This document shows positions 8,680 to 59,449 of a DNA stretch of 64,000 bases, piece after piece (positions within the stretch are counted from its first letter, which is position 1; each line of letters begins with the position of its first letter). Position numbers and translations under genes: made by a program. The notes under the pieces were generated by a model. It ran no database searches, was not told the origin of the DNA, and saw nothing but the letters and a program-made list of their open reading frames with translations. The DNA is taken from positions 14,942,001-15,006,000 of the forward strand of contig NC_043007.1 in the NCBI RefSeq assembly GCF_006345805.1. The letters are read 5' to 3'. Source of the DNA: Octopus sinensis. Its lineage: Eukaryota.

Positions 8680-8748
8680 ACACACACACACACATTCTCT
8701 CATTTTTTTCTCTCATTTTTTTTTCTCTCCTTGTTTCTTTCTGTGTTC

Positions 8749-8784
8749 CTTTCTGTCGAAGAGCGTGGGCTCGAAACGTAAAAG
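8749..8784 (+). ncRNA. Minimal type-I hammerhead motif with A6U lesion (H2)
   Basis: CTTT-CTGTCGA-A-GAGC-GTGG-GCTC-GAAAC-GTA-AAAG. Confidence 0.7.
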
Positions 8785-8867
8785 ACTTTTTAAATTCCTG
8801 AGCGTTATGCTAATACATCTGTTTTGTACACCACCTGTCTTCGTCTTTTGTTTTTTTCGTGAATTCT

Positions 8868-9127
<260 letters not shown>

Positions 9128-12729: not shown

Positions 12730-14935
12730 TATAAACCTGTCTCATATTGAGACCGCGTGGCAGCACTTTGAAACCATTGTCACCGACACATGCTCTAAAC
12801 ACGCTCCCAAGAAATCTACTAACACAAACAGACACCGGCTCCCTAAAAAGAAAAAAACACTCATCAGGCGCATCAAAAGACTCAACAAAAAAATCAACCA
12901 ATTAAAATATTCCCACACGCAACATCCACATTCAACAACAATGAAAAGACTAGAGCTGGAAAAACTTCATCTGCAGACTAACATGAAAACCTCCATTGAA
13001 AATCAAAGAGCTGTGGAGGAACAATGGGTAATCAAAAACATCAAACAGAACCCAAAAGTGTTCTATTCTTATGCAAATAAGCATAGAACCACTGTCTCAC
13101 CTATTGGGCCATTGATTGATGAAAACGGCATTCCCCAACACGATGCTAAAGAAATGGCAGAAATACTGCAGAAACAATATTGCTCTGTCTTCAGTGTTCC
13201 CACTGATATTGATGTGAGGGAAACGAACGAAGCTGACTCCCAACACAAAATCGCAGACATAACCTTCACTGCCACCGACATCGTAGCAGCAATAAATGAG
13301 GTCAAACATTACTCCGCTGTAGGCCCTGATAGATTTCCCGCCAGTCTCCTGAAGGAATGTAGATATCAACTTGCAGTCCCTCTGACCAACCTCTGGAGAA
13401 ACTCGTTAGACGCAGGTTATATACCGAAAAAGTTTCTATCCCAGTCGGTCATCCCGGTTTTCAAACAGGGAAACAGATCCCTCGCAGTCAACTATCACCC
13501 AATCTCACTCACCTCCCACATCATTAAAGTGTTTGAAAGAGTGTTAAGATCAAGGATAGCTGACTTCCTGGAGACCCACAAACTCCTAAATTCAAACCAA
13601 CATGGCTTTCGCTGTGGCAGGGACTGTCTAACACAGCTCTTACACCACATTGAAGATGTACTCAAAGCCTTGGGAACAGGTTCGAACTCTGACGTCATAT
13701 ACCTTGACTTCAGTAAAGCGTTCGACAGGGTAGACCATAACATCCTACTCTCAAAATTGGCAAATGTTGGAATCCGTGGAAAAGTTCTACACTGGATTCA
13801 GTATTTCCTAGCGAATAGAACACAACATGTTGTAGTTGATGGAGTCCACTCAAACCCAGCAAAAGTCACCAGCGGTGTTCCCCAGGGAACTGTTTTGGGT
13901 CCGCTACTCTTCATAATTTATGTAAACGACCTTTCCAGTGTCGTACATCACTGCAAAGTGAAAATATTCGCTGATGACACTAAGCTCCAGCAAATCGTCA
14001 ATGAAGAAGCAGACCGAACTCAACTCCAGTCTGACCTATATGCTGTGAGTCAATGGGCAGACAGAAACAAAATGCAACTGAATGAGGGAAAATTTGAGCT
14101 GATGCATTTTGGAAGAAATTCCTCACTAAAACAACCATACTCTCTTCCTTCAGGGGAACCGCTCACAGCCTCTAACAATATCAGAGACCTGGGTGTAATT
14201 GTTGATGACGATCTCAGTTGGAGTGCACACATCAACAAGAAGGTCGATACAGCTCGTAGGATGAGTTCCTGGATCTTAAGAACTTTCCGGTCCAGAGAAC
14301 AAGGTGTCATCATACCACTTTTTTCATCCTTTGTACGGCCACACCTTGAATACTGCTGCCCACTGTGGTCTCCTCACACAAGACAAAACATCTCCAGAAT
14401 TGAGTCACCCCAGAGGGCTCTTACTAAACAAATTGAAGGCATGGCTGCTCTCGACTATTGGGATCGCCTTAAAGCCTTGAAACTTTACTCCCTCTAGCGT
14501 CGCCGTGAGCGGTACATCATTTGTACGATGTGGAAAATATACCGCCAACTTTGCCCAAACGACCTAAACATTAGCTTCAAGGTTCATCCGAGACTTGGAC
14601 CACGGGCTATACGTCCCCTGCCAAATTCAAAATCACAACATACATGTACACTGCAACATAATTTCTTTTCCTCAACAGGCCCTGCCCTATTTAACATTGT
14701 CCCGAGGGAGATCAAAGAGGAAAAGGATCCCATCAACTTCAAACAGAGTCTGGATAGATTCCTTCAAAGAATACCAGACAAGCCACCCATAATTGGATAC
14801 AACTCACCCAACAAGAACTCACTACTTGAACAAAACTTGACTTAAACAGGATTCGAATAATCCTATCAGGTGGTGCTATTAAGTTAGACATGGCCTGGAC
14901 CAATCTCTGGTCGAAACATATCTAAGTTTCTAAGT
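12730..14935 (+). mobile_element. 5'-truncated CR1/L2-group LINE ORF2 (reverse transcriptase)
   Basis: Frame open from ~12730; YLDFSKAFD, GVPQGTVLGPLLF, FADD motifs; single TAG at 14495-14497, then in frame to 14845; endonuclease domain absent; CTAAGTT tail repeats. Confidence 0.93.
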
Positions 14936-18388: not shown

Positions 18389-18832
18389 TTAAACAAGGTG
18401 AAAAGGAAACACAAAGCTTACGATTAATAACATTGCACACGACTTCAACGAACAGGAAGATGAATAACCAGGGTTAAAAGAGTCATTTACAAAAAGAGCT
18501 GACCTCTCGATAGAAGTAACTACCTTTTTTCCGAACGGTAATGGTATATCTAGCCCAGACTCTTTAAGGCTTAATATAAAATCTTTATCTCCTGGCTTCG
18601 TTAACGTTATCGACATAATCGCTGCATTGAAACTCAGAGTGAAACTGCCGCCACGATAGTCAATGTTGTGTAGAGTGATATTAGTCGATCCCTCTGGAAG
18701 CTGCGGATCGAATTCAAGACGGTCTTTATATATTCTGAAACCACCATATCCAAATGTCAAACTCTGCAGAAAGCCGCCCATTCCAGTAAGGAAATTCACT
18801 GCTCCAGTTCCATCATTATATTCGGACCACAT
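18389..18832 (-). CDS. PGGHG: PGGHG-like terminal coding exon 11
   Basis: TTTTTCCCAG acceptor; MWSEYNDGTGAVNFLTGMGGFLQSLTFGYGG; ends in hydrophobic AMLLIVSFVFPFHLV-TAA. Confidence 0.95.
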   Translation of the reverse strand: MWSEYNDGTGAVNFLTGMGGFLQSLTFGYGGFRIYKDRLEFDPQLPEGSTNITLHNIDYRGGSFTLSFNAAIMSITLTKPGDKDFILSLKESGLDIPLPFGKKVVTSIERSALFVNDSFNPGYSSSCSLKSCAMLLIVSFVFPFHLV

Positions 18833-19072
18833 CTGGGAAAAAGAAGATAGAAAAAATACATATTAGATTTTAGCCAATATGAGAAGAATGGCTGGTTCGT
18901 CCAGTTTTAGGTTTGTTTTTCCAAGCTAGTAGGGTCAGACGAAACTTATTGAGACAGGCTTCATGTCCTCTCCAGTTTCTTCTCCAGTCTTGCGCAGGCC
19001 TGGGCTAGATGTGGGAAAATCCTGGGTAGCCCAATCGTCAGGATTCCTCTCTCGACCTTGCTGACGTAGTCC

Positions 19073-21412: not shown

Positions 21413-21463
21413 ATGTGTACGAAAAGAACCGATATTTTGTTTATCATAAATCTCAATAGATTT

Positions 21464-21880
21464 GGAGTGGCTATGTGGTAAGTAAGTTGCTTACCAACCA
21501 CATGATTCCGGGTTCAATCCCACTGCGTGGCATCTTGGGCAAGTGTCTTCTACTATAGCCTCGGGCCGACCAAAGCCTTGTGAGTGGATTTGGTAGACGG
21601 AAACTGAAAGAATCCCGTCGTATATATATGTATATATATATATATATGTATGTGTATGTGTATATGTTTGTGTGTCTGTGTTTGTCCCCCCAACATCGCT
21701 TGACAACCGATGCTGGTGTGTTTACGTCCCCGTCACTTAGCGGTTCGGCAAAAGAGACCGATAGAATAAGTACTGGGCTTACAAAGGATAAGTCCTGGGG
21801 TCGAGTTGCTCGACTAAATGCGGTGCTCCAGCATGGCCGCAGTCAAATGACTGAAACGAGTAAAAGAGTAAAGAGAGTAA
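21464..21880 (+). mobile_element. SINE family A, full length
   Basis: Family A head to tail. Confidence 0.9.
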
Positions 21881-22074
21881 GAGATATCCGTGTTCATGTT
21901 CATAACAGTGGTGACCCGAACATTTCGCAGCCTCGTCTTCTTCGTACAGGATTGCTCCGAATTAGGTCCTAAATAATTTCTTTCTTGAATGGGCAATAAA
22001 AAACCCCAAATAAAACAAAGCAAAATACAGAAACAAAACAAAACAAAAAAACAACCCATCCCAATCCCACTCAC

Positions 22075-22203
22075 CTTAAAAGGTTCCATAACGTTTTTGA
22101 AATTCCTTTTAAAGTTGGCATTGCCTTGTGATGAATTCTTCAACTCCAACCAACCAATAGAAAACATCGACCATGTCATAGCTGGGCCATTTTCATCGGA
22201 TAC
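22075..22203 (-). CDS. PGGHG: PGGHG-like coding exon 10
   Basis: CTCTTTAG acceptor; VSDENGPAMTWSMFSIGWLEL...EPFK; donor AAG|GTGAGT; 43 codons, phase 0-0. Confidence 0.95.
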
Positions 22204-22238
22204 CTAAAGAGAATAAAAAAAATCAGGAAAGAAGGAAG

Positions 22239-22273
22239 GTTTAACGTTTCGAGCGGAGCTCTTCGTCAGAAAC
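22239..22273 (-). ncRNA. Minimal type-I hammerhead ribozyme with intact core, in the PGGHG intron 9 3' end (H4)
   Basis: Minus strand: GTTT-CTGACGA-A-GAGC-TCC-GCTC-GAAAC-GTT-AAAC; predicted cleavage between 22243 and 22242. Confidence 0.8.
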
Positions 22274-22514
22274 ATAGGAAAAGGAAAGATCCAAAGAAGG
22301 GAAGACAGAGGAAAAAAATCGCCAACGGTACACACGCGGTCACCGACTTGTATGCCAGTAAATACGGTATTAGAAGATTCTTATTGTTGTTAAACCTACA
22401 TCAATCTAAAAACTAAGCTAACGACCACTGATGACTTTTTCCTGCGGTCTCACATTTCTAAACGAATTTCTATAAGTTTTTGACAGCTGGCAAATGGCTG
22501 AGTATTCTATAGAT

Positions 22515-22681
22515 ACGCAGGAGTGGCCGTGTGGTAAGTAGCTTGCTTACCAGCCACACGGTTCCGGATTCAGTCCCACTGCGTGGCACCTTGGGAAAGT
22601 GTCTTCTACTGTAGCTTCGGACCGACCAAAGCCTTGTGAGTGGATTTGGTAGACGGAAACTGAAAGAAGCCTGTCGTATAT

Positions 22682-22726
<45 letters not shown>

Positions 22727-22968
22727 GTGTGTGTGTGTGTGTGTTTGTGTGTTTGTGTGTCTGTGTTTGTCCTCCCCAACATCGCTTGACAACCGATGCT
22801 GGTATGTTTACGTCCCCGTTACCTAGCGGTTCGGCAAAAGAGACCGATAGAATAAGTACTGGGCTTACAAAGAATAAGTCCCGGGGTCGATTTGCTCGAC
22901 TAAAAGGCGGTGCTCCAGCATGGCCGCAGTCAAATGACTGAAACAAGTAAAAGAGTAAAGAGAGTAAA
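22515..22968 (+). mobile_element. SINE family A, full length
   Basis: Family A head to tail. Confidence 0.9.
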
Positions 22969-28433: not shown

Positions 28434-28649
28434 CTTGCTTATATCCATCATATTCTGGGTGGTACTGCAGCTTAGAATCAAATGGTAAGTACATATCATC
28501 CTTCACAATTTCGTAAACCTCTGTCTTTATAGACTCTTTACCCAGACGTTTAAGGCAGTCGACAGCCACTTCAAGACTCTTGACAGCTATGTAGTTGGTA
28601 TAGATGGAATTATCAACAGGATAATTGTATTCATCAGGGCCCATAACAC
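28434..28649 (-). CDS. PGGHG: PGGHG-like coding exon 8 (general-acid motif GPDEY)
   Basis: TTCAATAG|GT acceptor; GVMGPDEYNYPVDNSIYTN...YHPEYDGY; donor CAAG|GTAGGT. Confidence 0.95.
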
Positions 28650-29491
28650 CTATTGAATAAAGAGAGAACTTGGCAATGAGTTGTTTTATAATGCAGAACA
28701 AATAACATAGCATTTTGCTTGCTAGAGGTTCCTATAAGATAAAAATAGCAGTCAAATTTCTCATTACACACGACAAGCTGGCAGAATCGTTAGCATACCG
28801 GGCAAAATGCTTAGCGGTATTTCGTCCGTCTTTACTTTCTGAGTTCAAATTTGGCCGAGGTCGACTTCGCCTTTTATCCTTTCAGAGTCGATAAATTAAG
28901 TACCAGTGTAATCGACTAGTCCCCTTCCCCAAATTTTCAGGGTCTTGTGCCCAGAGTAGAAATGATATTTAAACAAACAATGGTCATGTCTGCATTGTTT
29001 GGGTTGTCATTGATCGTAACCTACTTTCTCATGCTTCAAAGCAGTGTTTCTCACAAGGGAAGCCATGATTCTCGAAATACAATAAAACAAAATAAATATT
29101 TCGTTTTTGTATCTGGTTTGCAAGATTCTGTATGTGGATTCGTGTGTTGAAACAAATTTTGTTGTGTCTGGAGAGAGTCATACTGCCTTAATATCCAGCA
29201 CCCTCACCGGTTTAGAAATATTAGACCAACCACACTGCTCAAAAACAAAGCTTACCTTAGCAAAATTTGAAATCACATGTTGAGAGCGTAAGTTGATTTA
29301 ATTAACACCAGTATTCAACTGGTACTTATTCTATCGACCCTGAAAAGATGAAAGGCAATGTCGACCTTGGCAGAATTTGAACTCAGAACGTAAAGATGGA
29401 CAAAATGCCGCATTTTCCCCGGCGTTAAGCATTTTGCTTTAGACTATATCAAATATCAAAATTATATTAATCATTATAAAATCCATATTAC

Positions 29492-29701
29492 CTGTTATAA
29501 TGTATTTCATCTGCTTCTTGTCGAGTGCCGCCCTGTGTATCCAAAATTCTGCGATATTTTGAAGCATTTCTGCTCCTCTTTCTTCCTTGAAAAAATCTAG
29601 GTCGTTTGTCATGTACAGATACTGTTGGGCGGCAAAAGCAATGTCTCCTGTCACGTGTTGTTCGTAAAGGGCCACCCAACGCGCGTTGGTTGTTTCCATA
29701 C
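29492..29701 (-). CDS. PGGHG: PGGHG-like coding exon 7
   Basis: TTACAG|GT acceptor; EQHVTGDIAFAAQQY...IAEFW; donor ACAG|GTAATA. Confidence 0.93.
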
Positions 29702-30066: not shown

Positions 30067-31423
30067 CATATATACGACGGGCTTCTTTCAGCTTCCGTCT
30101 ACCAAATCCACTGACAAGGCTTTGGTCGGCCCGAGGCTATAGCAGAAGACACTTGCCCAAGGTTGTGACTTTTGTATCTCTTTTGTAGATTTTAATTGAC
30201 ATAAGACTAACTTCATTGGACGTTGTACGAGAAGACAAAACCTTAAACTGTTGATGTCAACTGGAAAATGAAGAAAGCCAGGAAAGACAGAGAAGACATT
30301 TTCTTCGTCTTACCCGCAGGTTAGAGAAAAGATCAACCCAATAATATGTTGACCAAAACCTTATGAGTAAACTCACCGATAGAATAAATACTAGGCTTAA
30401 GAAATAAGTCCTGGGGTGGATTTATTCGACTAAAACCCATTCAAGGCGGTGCTCCAGTATGACCGCAGTGAAATAACTGAAACAAGTAAAAGAATAAAAG
30501 AATGGGAGATTAATCCTTGCCTTGCTTGGGCACGTCAGTCCACACTGGACCACCATACTAGACTTACAAGCCAGTCTTGAAGCTTGAATGCCTTTAATAC
30601 TGAATGAAAAACAACACTGGACTACCATAACTAGACCTAGAAGCCAGTCTGGAGGTTTGACGAGCCTTTAATAATGAATGATAAACAACACATTCATACA
30701 TGAATCTGTATATGTATGTCAGTGAACGCGCATGCGCGTTCGTGTTTTACCATTTTTGCTACAGACTTGATCGTACCAAATTATTTTATTAAGAATGTTT
30801 TCTTTTCTTTTATATTTGTTTTGTTTACTTGTTTCAGACATTAGATCCCGGCCATGCTGGGGGTACCGTTTTGAAGAGTTTAGTCGACCAAGTTGATCAC
30901 AATACTAATTTTTTTTTTGGTTTAAATCTGACATTTATTCTCTCGATATTTTTTTGCCGAACTTCTAAGTTACGGGGACATAAACAAACCAACATTGGTT
31001 AACAAACAGTATCAAGCAATGGTGGGGACAAACAAACAAATAAACATGCGCACACACAAACACACAAACACACAAGCACACACGCTTCCCTATAGTTTCC
31101 GTCCACCAACTACACTCACAAGGTATCTATCAGCCCGGAAATTTACAAGACATCTACCCAAGATGCCACGCAGTGGGACTGAACCCGAAACCATGTGGTT
31201 GCAAACCAACGTGAAATGAAATGCTTAGCTCAAGAATACAACGCATAGCCCAGTCGAGGAATCGAAACGACAATCTTACGATCATGAGACCAACATCTTT
31301 ACCGCTAAGCTATTTGTCTCCACTAGACTGTTTGAAATATAGCACAGATGCAAGCTTGTGCAACATTGTGTGTATGTATGCAAGTAAAATCGTGTGAAAA
31401 TAAGCATAAAGTTAACCACAGAC

Positions 31424-31607
31424 CTGTTTGCGCACTTTCCCATGGGTACATAGCTCCTTTGTGACCGTTCATGGCAGCCCTTGCTCGAGCAGCATCTAAA
31501 GTACGGGTTCTGGTCTTCATAAGGACTTTAGCCAAGTCTGCATTGAACATGAGTATTGGAGGGAACATCCATATGTCTTGGTCCCAGAATACATGTCCAC
31601 CATAGTC
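31424..31607 (-). CDS. PGGHG: PGGHG-like coding exon 6 (FWDQD motif)
   Basis: DYGGHVFWDQDIWMFPPILMF...GAMYPWESAQTG is a GH65 signature; acceptor TTGAAAG (weak pyrimidine tract); donor ACAG|GTCTGT. Confidence 0.93.
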
Positions 31608-38392: not shown

Positions 38393-38433
<41 letters not shown>

Positions 38434-38693
38434 CACACACACACACACACACACATATTGTGGTTTTATGTTCAACAACGATTGTTGCTCGTAGAAGGAT
38501 CAAACTATCACACACACACACACTCACACGCACACACACTCACACACACACACATATTGTGGATTTATGTTCAACAACGATTGTTGCTCGTAGAAGGATC
38601 AAACTATCACACACACACACACACTCACACACACACACACATATTGTGGATTTATGTTCAACAACGATTGTTGCTCGTAGAAGGATCAAACTA

Positions 38694-38725
<32 letters not shown>

Positions 38726-39254
38726 TAACACACACACACACACACACACACATATTGTGGTTTTATGTTCAACAACGATTGTTGCTCGTAGAAGGATCAA
38801 ACTATCACACACACACACACACACACACTCACACACACATATTGTGGTTTTATGTTCAACAACGATTGTTGCTCGTAGAAGGATCAAACTATCACACACA
38901 CACACACACTCACACACACACACATTAACACACACACACACACACACACACATATTGTGGTTTTATGTTCAACAACGATTGTTGCTCGTAGAAGATCAAA
39001 CTATCACACACACACCACTCACACACACCCACCACACACAACAACCCACAACACTCACACACACACACCACACATATTGTGGTTTTATGTTCAACACGAT
39101 TGTTGCTCGTAGAAGGATCAAACTATCACACACACACACACTCACACACACACACACAACACACACACACACACTCACACACACACATATTGTGGTTTTA
39201 TGTTCAACAACGATTGTTGCTCGTAGAAGGATCAAACTATCACACACACACACA

Positions 39255-39291
<37 letters not shown>

Positions 39292-39440
39292 ACACACACC
39301 ACACCACATATTGTGGTTTTTATGTTCAACAACGATTGTTGCTCGTAGAAGGATCAAACTATCACACACACACACCTCCACACACAACACACACACACCC
39401 ACACACACTCCACACACACACACCCATACACACACATTAA
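38379..39440. repeat. Composite minisatellite: nine 53-bp cores separated by variable (CA)n
   Basis: Cores start at 38456, 38555, 38642, 38753, 38840, 38953, 39075, 39188, 39309. Confidence 0.95.
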
Positions 39441-39564: not shown

Positions 39565-39610
<46 letters not shown>

Positions 39611-39726
39611 TAATCCAAACAAGAAAACACAGAAAAAAAGAGAAAAAAACACAGCAACGCAGGACGTGGAACATTAAAGTATTATTATTAAGGTACCGCA
39701 AGAGAATAGTCAAGAAAACAACTTAC

Positions 39727-46955: not shown

Positions 46956-47665
46956 TAGGAGGCTGGGCTGAAAAGTTCATAGGCTGACTATGAAGGAATG
47001 ACGCTTGAGTTGTGGAATCTTGCATGCATTAATTACAGGCGTAGGAGTGGCTGTGTGGTAAGTAGCCTGCTCACCAACCACATGGTTCCGGGTTCAGTTC
47101 CACTGCGTTGCACCTTGGGCAAAGTGTCTTCTACTAGAGCCTCGGGCCGACCAAAGCCTTGTGAGTGGATTTGGTAGACGGAAACTGAAAGAAGCCTGTC
47201 GTATATATGTATGTATATATGTGTGTGTGTATTTGTGTGTCTGTGTTTGTCCCCCTAGCATTGCTTGACAACCGATGTTGGTGTGTTTAGGTCCCCGTAA
47301 CTTAGCGGCTCGGCAAAAGAGACCGATAGAATAAGTACTAGTCTTACAAAAAGTAAGTCCTGGGGTCGATTTGCTCGACTAAAAGGCGGTGCTCCAGCAT
47401 GGCCACAGTCAAATGATTGAAACAAGTAAAAGAATAAAAGAGTAAATGAGTATATTAATAAATGCATTGTTTCTTTCCAGGTAAACTGACTGTTCAAAGA
47501 TGATTTTAAAGTAACTAGTAGTGACTTTTCTTGAAAATGGATAAGGTTTCGCATCGTGGGGTCATCTTCAAGAATCACCATAACCCTCCTAAATCCAGCT
47601 GCCTACTTTTGCACTGTTGGTAAAGCTGGAGCGTCGGCCCCTAATGCAGCAACCAGGTCAGCACG
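46956..47665 (+). mobile_element. Mariner remnant (TIR-like end, MDK start, inverted internal piece), interrupted by a SINE
   Basis: AGGAGGCTGGGCTGAAAAGTTCATAGGCTGAC end; + strand MDKVSHRGVI at 47537; - strand ADLVAALGADAPALPTVQK*AAGFRR..LEDDP. Confidence 0.65.
47037..47444 (+). mobile_element. SINE family A inserted in the mariner remnant
   Basis: Family A head to tail. Confidence 0.9.
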
Positions 47666-48212: not shown

Positions 48213-49465
48213 AGACACTGAAGGTTTCAATATTGGCGGCACAAAACCAAAGCTTACTCATCAAAAAACTACCAGGCTAACGTTCTTCGAAACAGTTCCG
48301 ACTCTAAATGCAGATTCCGCGATAAATTTGATGAAACAATTGACCATCTCATCTCGAGATGTCCCGTGCTGACACCAAACGAATACATTTGATACATTTG
48401 ATACGTCTCGGGATGTCATGTGCTGACACCAAACGAATACATAAATCACCATGATAGGGTAGGGCAGTATTTACATTGGAAAATATGTAAACACTACAAA
48501 ATCAGCACTCCTGCTTACGGAGCCAGTCGTTGAATGTAAAAATGTCACTATCCTCTGGGATTTTCCAGTCAACACCGACAGAACGATCCAGGCTAATCGA
48601 CCAGACATAATCATTAAAGACAGAGAAGAAAATACTTGTAAACTAATAGACGTAAGTGTTCCTACTAATAAAAAAATGTATCTGTAAAGGAATTTGACAA
48701 ATTAAGTAAACATAAGGCGCAGGAGTGGCTGTGTGGTAAGTAGCTTTCTTACCAACCACATGGTTACGGGTTCAGTCCCACTGCGTGGCACCATGGGCAA
48801 GTGTCTTCTACTATAGCCTCGGGCCGACCAAAGCCTTGTGAGGGGATTTGGTTGACGGAAACCGAAAGAAGCCCGTCGTATATATGTGTGTGTATGTATG
48901 TTGTGTATCTGTATTTGTTCCCCCAACATCGCTTGACAACCGATGCTGGTGTGTTTACGTCCCCGTAACTTAGCGGTTCGGCAAAAGAGACCTATAGAAT
49001 AAGTACTAGGCTTTCAAAGAACAAGTCCTCGGGTCGATTTGATTCGACTAAAGGCTGTGCTCCGGCATGGCCGCAGTCAAATGACTGAAACAAGTGAAGA
49101 AAAATAAGGACCTGGAAATTGAAATACAAAAGATGTGACATCTTAAAGTGAGAACTGTTCCTGTTATTGTGGGTTCCCTTGTTATGATAAGAAAGGGATG
49201 TCAGAAACATATAGATAATACTCCAGGAGAACCACGTCTCAGAGAAATCCGAAAGATTGTGCTGACAAGTACTGCCAACAGACTTAGAAAAACCCTATCA
49301 ATTTTAATGTCTGTGTTGTATTACATGAAGATATTTCGCTACTGCCCCTATCACATCCCTTCCACAAGCTTTCAGTCATACTGTAATATCTCTTATCCTT
49401 CACTCGCCCTAGGACGCTGGGTGTGTCTCGGCGAGTGATTGTAACACACATGAAGATTAAAAGTA

Positions 49466-59251: not shown

Positions 59252-59290
59252 ATATATATATATCACCTCGGATCTTCTTTCTTCTCCTAT

Positions 59291-59324
59291 GTTTCGACGA
59301 AGAGCTCCGCTCGAAACGTCATAC
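59291..59324 (+). ncRNA. Minimal hammerhead, same family as H4, U4 deleted (H10)
   Basis: GTTT-C(-)GACGA-A-GAGC-TCC-GCTC-GAAAC-GTC-ATAC. Confidence 0.7.
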
Positions 59325-59412
59325 CCTCCTTCCCTTTTTTCCTGAGCGCCTAATAATACTTTATTGTTCCACTCTTTGCGTTTGTTGTCTTTTTTGTTTT
59401 CTTGTTGGATTA

Positions 59413-59449
<37 letters not shown>

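What the first reader, a model, noticed from the sequence alone, without database searches (positions are those of the whole stretch)
22204..22273. Intact sense-strand hammerhead predicted to cut ~40 nt upstream of the exon 10 acceptor
Seen: H4 (GTTT-CTGACGA-A-GAGC-TCC-GCTC-GAAAC-GTT|AAAC) lies where a branch point would be expected, and the repeat's CT-rich flank contributes to the pyrimidine tract ahead of the AG at 22205-22204. Helix III is only AACGTT, so cleavage likely needs a second RNA copy. Known: intronic ribozymes next to exons exist (CPEB3 HDV-like, amniote intronic hammerheads). Inference: a possible dimer- or trans-activated switch coupling ribozyme-repeat RNA abundance to PGGHG splicing; it may also be simply inert.
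Basis: partly seen in the sequence, partly recalled or inferred. Interest (0 to 1): 0.75.

Follow-up and report, generated by a model that had tools for sequence, protein, structure and literature searches.

The report
Transposon-borne minimal hammerhead in intron
The hammerhead-like motif is really there on the gene's strand 39 bases before the exon, but it belongs to a young, truncated copy of a short mobile element present thousands of times in this genome, and it is most likely inert rather than a splicing switch.

Summary
Observation confirmed. Window 22273-22239 (- strand) reads helix I GUUU / CUGACGA / extra A / helix II GAGC-UCC-GCUC / GAAA / loopless ACGU / U17, then AAAC. The predicted cut is 22243|22242, 39 nt before the AG at 22205-22204 of a 129-nt exon of a GH65 (PGGHG-like) gene on the same strand.

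The motif is not gene-specific. It lies in a 121-nt, 3'-truncated copy (22343-22223) of a ~265-nt interspersed element that usually sits in (TA)n tracts. The identical 35-mer occurs 717 times in the genome. A U4-to-C form with a broken core occurs 3409 times.

The motif matches the 'minimal hammerhead' of Penelope-like retroelements: extra base after A9, G10.1-C11.1, and a palindromic helix III without a loop. In published assays single motifs of this type show no detectable cleavage, and tandem copies cut only weakly.

No second sense copy lies in the window. ViennaRNA puts the active dimer (-7.3 kcal/mol) far below two free monomers (-15.4) and an inactive dimer (-24.7). A spliced mRNA contig contains the exon.

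Verdict: ordinary transposon debris. It may supply the branch point and part of the pyrimidine tract. The switch idea is unsupported, and cleavage and conservation in other species could not be tested. Earlier scan notes read similar copies in other genes the same way.

The parts
22223..22343 (-). 121-nt, 3'-truncated copy of a ~265-nt interspersed element (family 1). Full copies continue for ~140 nt more and end in (TA)n. This copy is not in a (TA)n tract.
   Evidence: Homology to 30 genomic copies runs from 22343 to 22225/22223 and stops. Alignment of 32 copies. Flanks.
22239..22273 (-). Minimal type I hammerhead motif: helix I GUUU/AAAC, CUGACGA, extra A, helix II GAGC-UCC-GCUC, GAAA, loopless ACGU, U17.
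   Evidence: Only descriptor hit in the window, against 0 in 262 Mb of random sequence.
22242..22243 (-). Predicted scissile bond, after U17 (22243) and before A1.1 (22242). Prediction only.
   Evidence: Read from the hammerhead numbering of the sequence. No read-end data could be had (contigs only).
22222..22226 (-). Best branch-point candidate CUGAU. The A at 22223 is 19 nt before the AG. Its first four bases are the last bases of the repeat fragment.
   Evidence: Sequence, yUnAy consensus (established knowledge), and no AG between it and 22205. Inference, not mapped.
22204..22221 (-). T-rich tract and acceptor AG (22205-22204). Not part of the repeat.
22075..22203 (-). 129-nt coding exon of the GH65 (PGGHG-like) gene. 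An in-frame TAG lies just upstream, and the donor GT is at 22074-22073.
   Evidence: The X2 contig of depth 89.8 covers 22117/22127, 24505 and 18700-18834. Neighbouring GH65 exons.
59270..59425 (+). Older, 5'-truncated family-1 copy on the other strand, ending in (TA)n. Its hammerhead is broken: CGACGA (one base lost) and GUC-AUAC in place of GUU-AAAC.
8705..8972 (+). Copy of the related family 2 with a decayed core (CUGUCGA), followed by (TA)n.
39566..39686 (-). Fragment of the 3' half of family 1. It has no hammerhead part, so it cannot act as a partner.

Best explanation
The motif is the minimal, dimer-dependent hammerhead carried by a short non-autonomous retroelement (~265 nt), probably mobilised by Penelope-like elements.

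One young copy landed, or was later trimmed, so that its first 121 nt now end 19 nt before the acceptor of a GH65-gene exon, in sense orientation.

As a lone copy in the pre-mRNA it cannot close helix III. It folds instead into a hairpin that pairs the core with the cleavage site, so it does not cut at any meaningful rate, and the intron is spliced normally.

Its only plausible contribution to the gene is passive. The CT-rich tail and the terminal CUGA of the fragment now form part of the pyrimidine tract and probably the branch point.

Shown: motif, repeat membership, copy numbers, subfamily history, gene strand, exon present in mRNA.
Inferred: Penelope-type mobilisation, lack of cleavage, branch-point use.
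For: Repeat membership:
- At least 494 candidates; 40 scored at 93-100% identity.
- The homology stops at 22343 and 22223.
- Full copies are ~265 nt and flanked by (TA)n.

Copy numbers of the exact 35-mer:
- 717 with CUGA.
- 3409 with CCGA.
- 155 for a control CpG decay at the next CpG.
- Reversed-pattern controls gave 0.

Genuine hammerhead lineage:
- Family 2 is homologous over the whole element. Within the 35-nt block it differs only at N7 and two loop-II bases, the unconstrained positions.
- The degenerate core pattern has 9760 matches against 491 for the reversed control.
- The motif has the non-descriptor traits listed for Penelope min-HHRs in PMC4209133: an extra base between 9 and 10.1, G10.1-C11.1, and a palindromic 15.2-16.2.

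Penelope-style insertion:
- (TA)n targets.
- A head-to-head pair of an inverted 5'-truncated copy and a full copy at L089, as described in PMC8557442.
- At least 5029 GIY-YIG candidates, with ORFs up to 883 aa, in the genome.

Inertness:
- Single min-HHRs gave no detectable cleavage in vitro, and dimers or trimers only low cleavage (PMC4209133; review PMC6765202).
- Hammerhead-like monomer fold -4.6 against MFE -7.7 kcal/mol. Double hammerhead -7.3, against -15.4 for two monomers and -24.7 for an inactive dimer.
- No other intact sense copy in the window.
- A spliced contig contains the exon.
Against: - No experiment or read-end data exists for this RNA. Only assembled contigs were available, so low-level cleavage cannot be excluded.
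- Nearest-neighbour energies ignore tertiary contacts and proteins. One Penelope hammerhead is protein-assisted in vitro (PMC11167929).
- Other family transcripts may be abundant: contigs of runs guessed to be RNA pile up on the repeat.
- The link to Penelope-like elements is indirect. Neither 30 endonuclease loci nor 8 loci with intact 762-883-aa ORFs carry this family next to the ORF.
- A 3'-truncated copy outside (TA)n is atypical for target-primed insertion and is unexplained.
Confidence: 0.82

Rival explanations
1. Weak ribozyme brake. The motif cuts a fraction of the pre-mRNAs upstream of the branch point. It would do so by pairing its ACGU palindrome with transcripts of other family copies, or with help from a Penelope-element protein. 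Transposon expression would then lower the gene's mRNA.
For: - The core is intact and in sense orientation.
- The hammerhead block has been kept between two families.
- Hundreds of identical motifs could supply partners.
- Dimer cleavage of such variants is known (PMC4209133, PMC6765202).
- Protein-assisted cleavage was seen for the anole Poseidon-type element PAc (PMC11167929).
- Retrozymes are depleted from introns in vertebrates (bioRxiv 10.64898/2026.07.22.740005).
Against: - The trans contact is a 4-6 bp palindrome worth -3.5 to -5.5 kcal/mol.
- The active dimer is 8 kcal/mol worse than two free monomers and 17 kcal/mol worse than an inactive dimer.
- Helix I has only 4 bp, and there are no loop-loop contacts.
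- The mRNA with this exon is assembled at good depth.
- The copy looks too young to be a selected device.
Confidence: 0.07
2. Chance look-alike. The family is not a ribozyme carrier at all. The CUGA of this copy is CpG-to-TpG decay of the commoner CCGA form, and it merely completes a hammerhead-like string.
For: - CCGA copies outnumber CUGA copies 3409 to 717.
- CCGA to CTGA is a CpG transition.
- Some copies with the subfamily-B backbone carry CTGA.
- No Rfam hit.
Against: - The older family 2 has CUGA-A-GA, where no CpG is involved, and the rest of the motif is identical. CUGA is therefore ancestral.
- Decay at the neighbouring CpG gives only 155 copies, so most of the 717 are an amplified subfamily.
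- The descriptor gave 0 hits in 262 Mb of random sequence.
- All four extra min-HHR traits are present.
Confidence: 0.05
3. Exapted splice signals. The insertion matters to the gene not as a ribozyme but because its tail now provides the branch point (CUGAU, A at 22223) and extends the pyrimidine tract. This is compatible with the best explanation.
For: - The repeat ends exactly at CCUGA, 19 nt before the AG, and no AG lies in between.
- The only other yUnAy match is CUGAC inside the core, 62 nt upstream.
- The 18 nt of non-repeat sequence before the AG hold one A, at 22214, only 10 nt from the AG.
Against: - The branch point is not mapped.
- Distant branch points do occur.
- The state of the intron before insertion is unknown.
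Confidence: 0.3

Closest known systems
Minimal hammerheads (min-HHR) of Penelope-like elements (Cervera & de la Pena 2014, PMC4209133; Lunse, Weinberg & Breaker 2016, cited in PMC6765202)
   Same: - Type I order.
- CUGANGA and GAAA boxes.
- An extra base between 9 and 10.1.
- G10.1-C11.1 pair.
- Helix III reduced to a palindrome without a loop, so activity needs two copies.
- Thousands of copies per genome.
- AT-rich or (TA)n insertion sites and head-to-head insertions.
   Different: - The motif here sits in a ~265-nt non-coding element, not in a pLTR next to an RT/EN ORF. No autonomous partner was found.
- Helix II is 4 bp, whereas the paper often reports about 6 bp.
- The largest subfamily has lost U4.
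SINE-like hammerhead elements and non-LTR retrozymes (Schistosoma Sm-alpha, newt satellite 2, mussel/coral/axolotl retrozymes; PMC7229834)
   Same: Short non-autonomous repeats carrying a type I hammerhead. Weak helix III and dimer dependence, as in the amphibian cases.
   Different: - Retrozymes are tandem arrays that yield 170-400-nt circular RNAs.
- This family is mostly dispersed single copies. The locus here is a lone, truncated copy, so no monomer can be excised.
Conserved intronic hammerheads of amniotes (RECK, CTCL, DTNB; de la Pena & Garcia-Robles 2010, summarised in PMC6155905)
   Same: A hammerhead in the sense strand of an intron, thought to descend from retroelement ribozymes.
   Different: - The amniote motifs are complete type I hammerheads with loop-loop contacts, are active as monomers, and are kept at the same intron across classes.
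- The motif here is a minimal form. It has at most one private difference from its nearest genomic copy (L002) and shows no sign of locus-specific conservation.
CPEB3 HDV-like intronic ribozyme
   Same: A self-cleaving motif inside an intron, in sense orientation.
   Different: A different ribozyme class. It is single-copy, conserved across mammals, and folds on its own.

Membership tests
Hammerhead ribozyme (core definition) | Conserved boxes C3-U4-G5-A6-N7-G8-A9 and G12-A13-A14, with A15.1-U16.1 and a non-G at position 17 | tested here: met
   CUGACGA at 22269-22263, GAA at 22250-22248, A15.1 at 22247, U16.1 at 22244, U17 at 22243.
Hammerhead ribozyme (core definition) | Three helices around the core, helix III closed in the same molecule | tested here: not met
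   Helix I is 4 bp and helix II is 4 bp. Helix III is ACGU with no loop and cannot close in cis. The monomer MFE pairs the core with the cleavage site.
Hammerhead ribozyme (Rfam Hammerhead_1/3/II, HH9, HH10 models) | Score at or above the curated threshold of a covariance model | tested here: not met
   No hammerhead match at gathering score in the window. None at E<=10 in 21700-22800.
Hammerhead ribozyme | Site-specific self-cleavage giving 2',3'-cyclic phosphate and 5'-OH ends | not testable with these tools
   Only assembled contigs were served, with no raw reads.
Penelope-type minimal hammerhead (min-HHR) | Extra nucleotide between 9 and 10.1, G10.1-C11.1 pair, palindromic 15.2-16.2, loop 3 absent or palindromic | tested here: met
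   A at 22262; G at 22261 pairs with C at 22251; C15.2-G16.2 lies within ACGU. Criteria quoted from PMC4209133.
Penelope-type minimal hammerhead (min-HHR) | Location in the pLTR of an element encoding RT plus a GIY-YIG endonuclease | tested here: inconclusive
   Penelope-like ORFs are abundant in the genome, but 38 such loci do not carry this family beside the ORF. The insertion style, (TA)n targets and a head-to-head pair at L089, fits Penelope-like elements.
Non-LTR retrozyme | Tandem repeats, each with a hammerhead, giving small circular RNAs | tested here: not met
   This is a lone truncated copy. Among about 200 listed genomic positions only a few lie within 2 kb of each other. Circular RNA was not testable.
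Domesticated intronic hammerhead (amniote type) | Kept at the orthologous intron across distant species | not testable with these tools
The copy has at most one difference from its nearest genomic copy, L002, over 119 nt. That points to a recent insertion (inference).

The most novel reading that the evidence does not exclude
Sense-strand intronic copies of this minimal hammerhead, this one included, might be cut when family RNA or a Penelope-element protein is abundant. Bursts of transposon expression would then lower the output of many host genes at once, and a copy placed just upstream of a branch point would be the most effective position.
Probability: 0.04. Interest if true: 0.7.

Novelty: new member of a known kind. 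Interest (0 to 1): 0.15.

Why it matters
For this gene it matters little. The motif is explained by a common mobile element, and nothing ties it to regulation of the GH65 gene.

Two side results are of some use.

First, this genome holds several hammerhead-bearing repeat families, about 20 times more core-pattern matches than a reversed control. Single 'intact hammerhead near an exon' findings in this genome should therefore be read as transposon copies by default.

Second, the most prolific subfamily lost core base U4 and still reached thousands of copies. This is a natural experiment suggesting that ribozyme catalysis is not needed for spread of this element. It agrees with the in vitro result for an anole Penelope element (PMC11167929).

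Tried and rejected
- Rfam, at gathering score and at E<=10: no hammerhead hit. This is expected for a loopless helix III and does not count against a min-HHR.
- RNA evidence: the look-up of sequencing runs gave only Logan contigs with guessed kinds. Read laying was swamped by repeats, and splice joints and read ends were not listed. Only indirect evidence of splicing came out, and nothing on cleavage or on presence of the insertion in the related organism D.
- Penelope link by adjacency: 30 GIY-YIG loci with +-1.5 kb flanks, and 8 ten-kb loci with intact ORFs, showed no family copy beside the ORF.
The age comparison (7.7% against 5.8% pairwise distance) therefore rests on a biased sample of 26 copies.
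- Pfam on the 43-46-aa exon peptide alone: no hit. Gene identity rests on the neighbouring exons.
- Exons were searched one by one by reference.
- The big protein searches, structure tools and complex prediction were not used, because no protein question was open.
- Rejected idea: that the acceptor AG itself derives from the repeat's 3' half. The similarity is only T-richness, and the exon is coding.

Full report
**What is there**

On the - strand, window 22273-22239 reads, in hammerhead terms:
- helix I 5' strand GUUU
- core box CUGACGA
- one extra A
- helix II GAGC-UCC-GCUC
- GAA
- A15.1-C15.2-G16.2-U16.1 with no loop between them
- U17
- helix I 3' strand AAAC

The predicted scissile bond is between 22243 and 22242. 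That is 39 nt upstream of exon base 22203; the acceptor AG is at 22205-22204.

A strict minimal-hammerhead descriptor finds exactly this site in the window. The descriptor requires a 4-bp helix I, CUGANGA, an optional extra base, a 4-bp helix II closed by G...C with a 3-8 nt loop, GAAA, a loopless Watson-Crick 15.2-16.2 pair, U16.1 and a non-G at position 17. It finds nothing in 4096 random 64-kb sequences with the window's dinucleotide statistics, both strands searched.

No Rfam hammerhead model matches, either at the curated threshold or at E<=10 in a 1.1-kb slice. This fits the missing helix III hairpin.

**Gene context**

GH65 central-domain matches (PF03632) lie on the - strand at window 31422-31607, 29490-29699 and 28435-28650. 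The ORF at 18392-18832 (-) carries the GH65 C-terminal domain. The exon after the motif is 22203-22075 (129 nt, 43 codons; an in-frame TAG lies just upstream and the donor GT is at 22074-22073).

In run X2 one 2358-nt contig of depth 89.8 touches 18700-18834. Differences carrying the same depth value mark 22117/22127 and 24505, so a spliced transcript very probably contains this exon and both neighbours.

The motif is therefore in the sense strand of an intron of a GH65 (PGGHG-like) gene. I did not verify the number 'exon 10'.

**The motif belongs to a repeat**

A 121-nt query gave at least 494 genomic candidates, and the 40 that were scored were 93-100% identical. Against 30 fetched copies the homology of the window runs from 22343 to 22225/22223 and stops.

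Among themselves the copies continue for about 140 nt more. The full unit is ~265 nt and is flanked on both sides by (TA)n in most copies. The window copy is thus 3'-truncated. It is not in a (TA)n tract, which is unusual and unexplained.

The window copy has at most one difference from its nearest genomic copy over 119 nt (L002), so the insertion looks recent (inference).

Other family pieces in the window:
- an older 5'-truncated copy on the + strand at 59270-59425, with a broken core
- a family-2 copy at 8705-8972 (+), with a decayed core
- a 3'-half fragment at 39566-39686 (-), without the hammerhead part

No second intact copy lies on the gene's strand in the window.

**Copy numbers and history**

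| 35-mer form | Copies in the genome |
|---|---|
| CUGACGA (as in the window) | 717 |
| CCGACGA (U4 replaced by C) | 3409 |
| CCGAUGA (control: decay at the next CpG) | 155 |

Reversed-pattern controls gave 0 in all three searches. Most CUGA copies are therefore an amplified subfamily, not scattered CpG decay.

An older, related family (family 2, L061-L068) is homologous over the whole element. Its motif is CUGA-A-GA-A-GAGC-UUU-GCUC-GAAACGUU-AAAC. Within the 35-nt block the two family consensuses differ only at N7 and at two loop-II bases, which are positions a hammerhead leaves free. If three changes fell at random among 35 positions, of which about five are free, the chance of this is about 0.002 (my calculation).

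Family 2 has no CpG at this place, so CUGA is ancestral and CCGA derived. The most prolific subfamily lost a core base and still spread. In a small, biased sample the CCGA copies are also slightly less diverged in the 3' half (5.8% against 7.7%).

**Which known kind it is**

Cervera and de la Pena (PMC4209133) defined the 'min-HHR' of Penelope-like elements. It is a type I hammerhead whose helix III is missing or is a small palindrome. Its recurrent traits are an extra base between 9 and 10.1, a G10.1-C11.1 pair, and palindromic 15.2-16.2. All of these are present here.

They report no detectable cleavage for a single motif and low cleavage for dimer and trimer constructs. [quoted passage not shown]

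Several things fit a Penelope-type origin:
- Penelope-like elements often insert in (TA)n and form head-to-head pairs with an inverted 5'-truncated copy (PMC8557442).
- Locus L089 shows exactly such a structure for this family: (TA)n, an inverted 5'-truncated copy, a full copy, then (TA)n.
- The genome has at least 5029 GIY-YIG candidates with open frames up to 883 aa.
- The degenerate pattern CUGANGA-N-G...CGAAAC has 9760 matches against 491 for the reversed control, in several distinct families.

However, I could not find this family next to an RT/EN ORF in 30 + 8 loci. Mobilisation by Penelope-like elements is therefore an inference, not a result.

**Would it cut here?**

ViennaRNA at 37 C, on a 45-nt segment:

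| Structure | Energy (kcal/mol) |
|---|---|
| Hammerhead-like monomer (helices I and II) | -4.6 |
| Monomer MFE | -7.7 |
| Double hammerhead (active dimer) | -7.3 |
| Two free monomers | -15.4 |
| Inactive extended dimer (uses the GAGCUC and GUUUC/GAAAC self-complementarity) | -24.7 |

- The monomer MFE pairs U4-G8 with C15.2-A1.1. This hides both the core and the cleavage site.
- The bare AACGUU self-duplex is worth -3.5 kcal/mol.
- Helix I has only 4 bp, and there are no loops to make the tertiary contacts that fast natural hammerheads use (PMC6155905).

These numbers ignore proteins and tertiary structure. One Penelope hammerhead is protein-assisted in vitro, although its catalytic mutants still insert, and no RNA-seq reads end at its site (PMC11167929).

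Taken together, a lone copy in this intron is expected to be inert. If it did cut, the break would lie between the 5' splice site and the probable branch point and would destroy that transcript.

**Splice signals**

Between the predicted cut and the AG, the only good yUnAy match is CUGAU at 22226-22222. Its A at 22223 is 19 nt from the AG, and no AG intervenes. Its first four bases are the last bases of the repeat fragment.

The CUGAC inside the core (A at 22266) is 62 nt away. The 18 non-repeat bases before the AG hold a single A, only 10 nt from it.

The fragment may therefore now supply the branch point and about 15 nt of pyrimidine tract. This is inference from the sequence and was not mapped.

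**Limits**

- No raw reads were available. The single read-laying run was swamped by repeats and gave nothing on read ends or on the related organisms.
- Cleavage, branch point, polymorphism and conservation in other octopods therefore remain untested.

Earlier notes of this scan on other genes of the same genome (POLRMT, VPS11, NF1) reached the same reading for similar motifs. I treat them as agreement, not as evidence.

**Verdict**

This is a real minimal hammerhead motif, correctly described, but it is an ordinary transposon copy. The switch hypothesis has no support, and inertness is the best explanation (about 0.8). Novelty: a new member of a known kind. Interest is low.

Noticed in passing
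genome-wide; alignment of L001-L030: The subfamily whose hammerhead core is broken (CCGACGA, U4 to C) has 3409 exact 35-mer copies, against 717 for the intact form. Outgroup family 2 shows that the intact form is ancestral. Ribozyme catalysis therefore seems dispensable for spread of this element.
   Followed up: partly
L069-L071, L073-L075 (G000 contig C1, several places): A different repeat family carries a fuller type I hammerhead. It has CUGA-N-GA, helix II of the GAGCC...GGCUC type, GAAAC, a 7-nt loop, GUC, then helix I UCGCGA. It is followed by a sequence with a tRNA-like GGTTCG box.
   Followed up: no
L072, L079, L080 (G000 contig C1): A third kind has a 6-bp helix I abutting GAAAC with no helix III at all (for example GCGUCA-CUGACGA...GAAAC-UGACGU). 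It includes a 6-bp helix II with a GGAA loop. These are further minimal hammerhead families in the same genome.
   Followed up: no
L088:901-1100 and L088:6836-7035: Two 100% identical 200-nt direct repeats lie 5935 nt apart and flank ORFs of 479 and 781 aa, the second with a C-terminal GIY-YIG domain. Each repeat has CUGACGA...GAAA followed by the palindrome AUCGGUCCGAU. This is possibly a pLTR hammerhead of an autonomous Penelope-like element, but it was not found in seven other loci holding long PLE ORFs (762-883 aa).
   Followed up: partly
window 12941-14497 (+): A 518-aa open frame with reverse-transcriptase-like motifs (for example YLDFSKAFDRV), downstream of the GH65 gene. Probably a LINE fragment.
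   Followed up: no
window 21458-21875, 22514-22960, 47038-47440, 48716-49108 and others: tRNA-derived SINE copies with an internal (TA)n/(TG)n microsatellite. One lies in the same intron about 170 nt upstream of the hammerhead fragment. They caused the weak microRNA-like Rfam hits.
   Followed up: no
window 38420-39390: A tandem array with units starting about 87-122 nt apart, each a short unique unit plus a (CA)n run.
   Followed up: no
L028/L029 (G000:C1:44319649-44320622): Two family-1 copies lie 873 nt apart in direct orientation. A SINE is duplicated along with them, so this looks like a local tandem duplication rather than a retrozyme-like array.
   Followed up: partly
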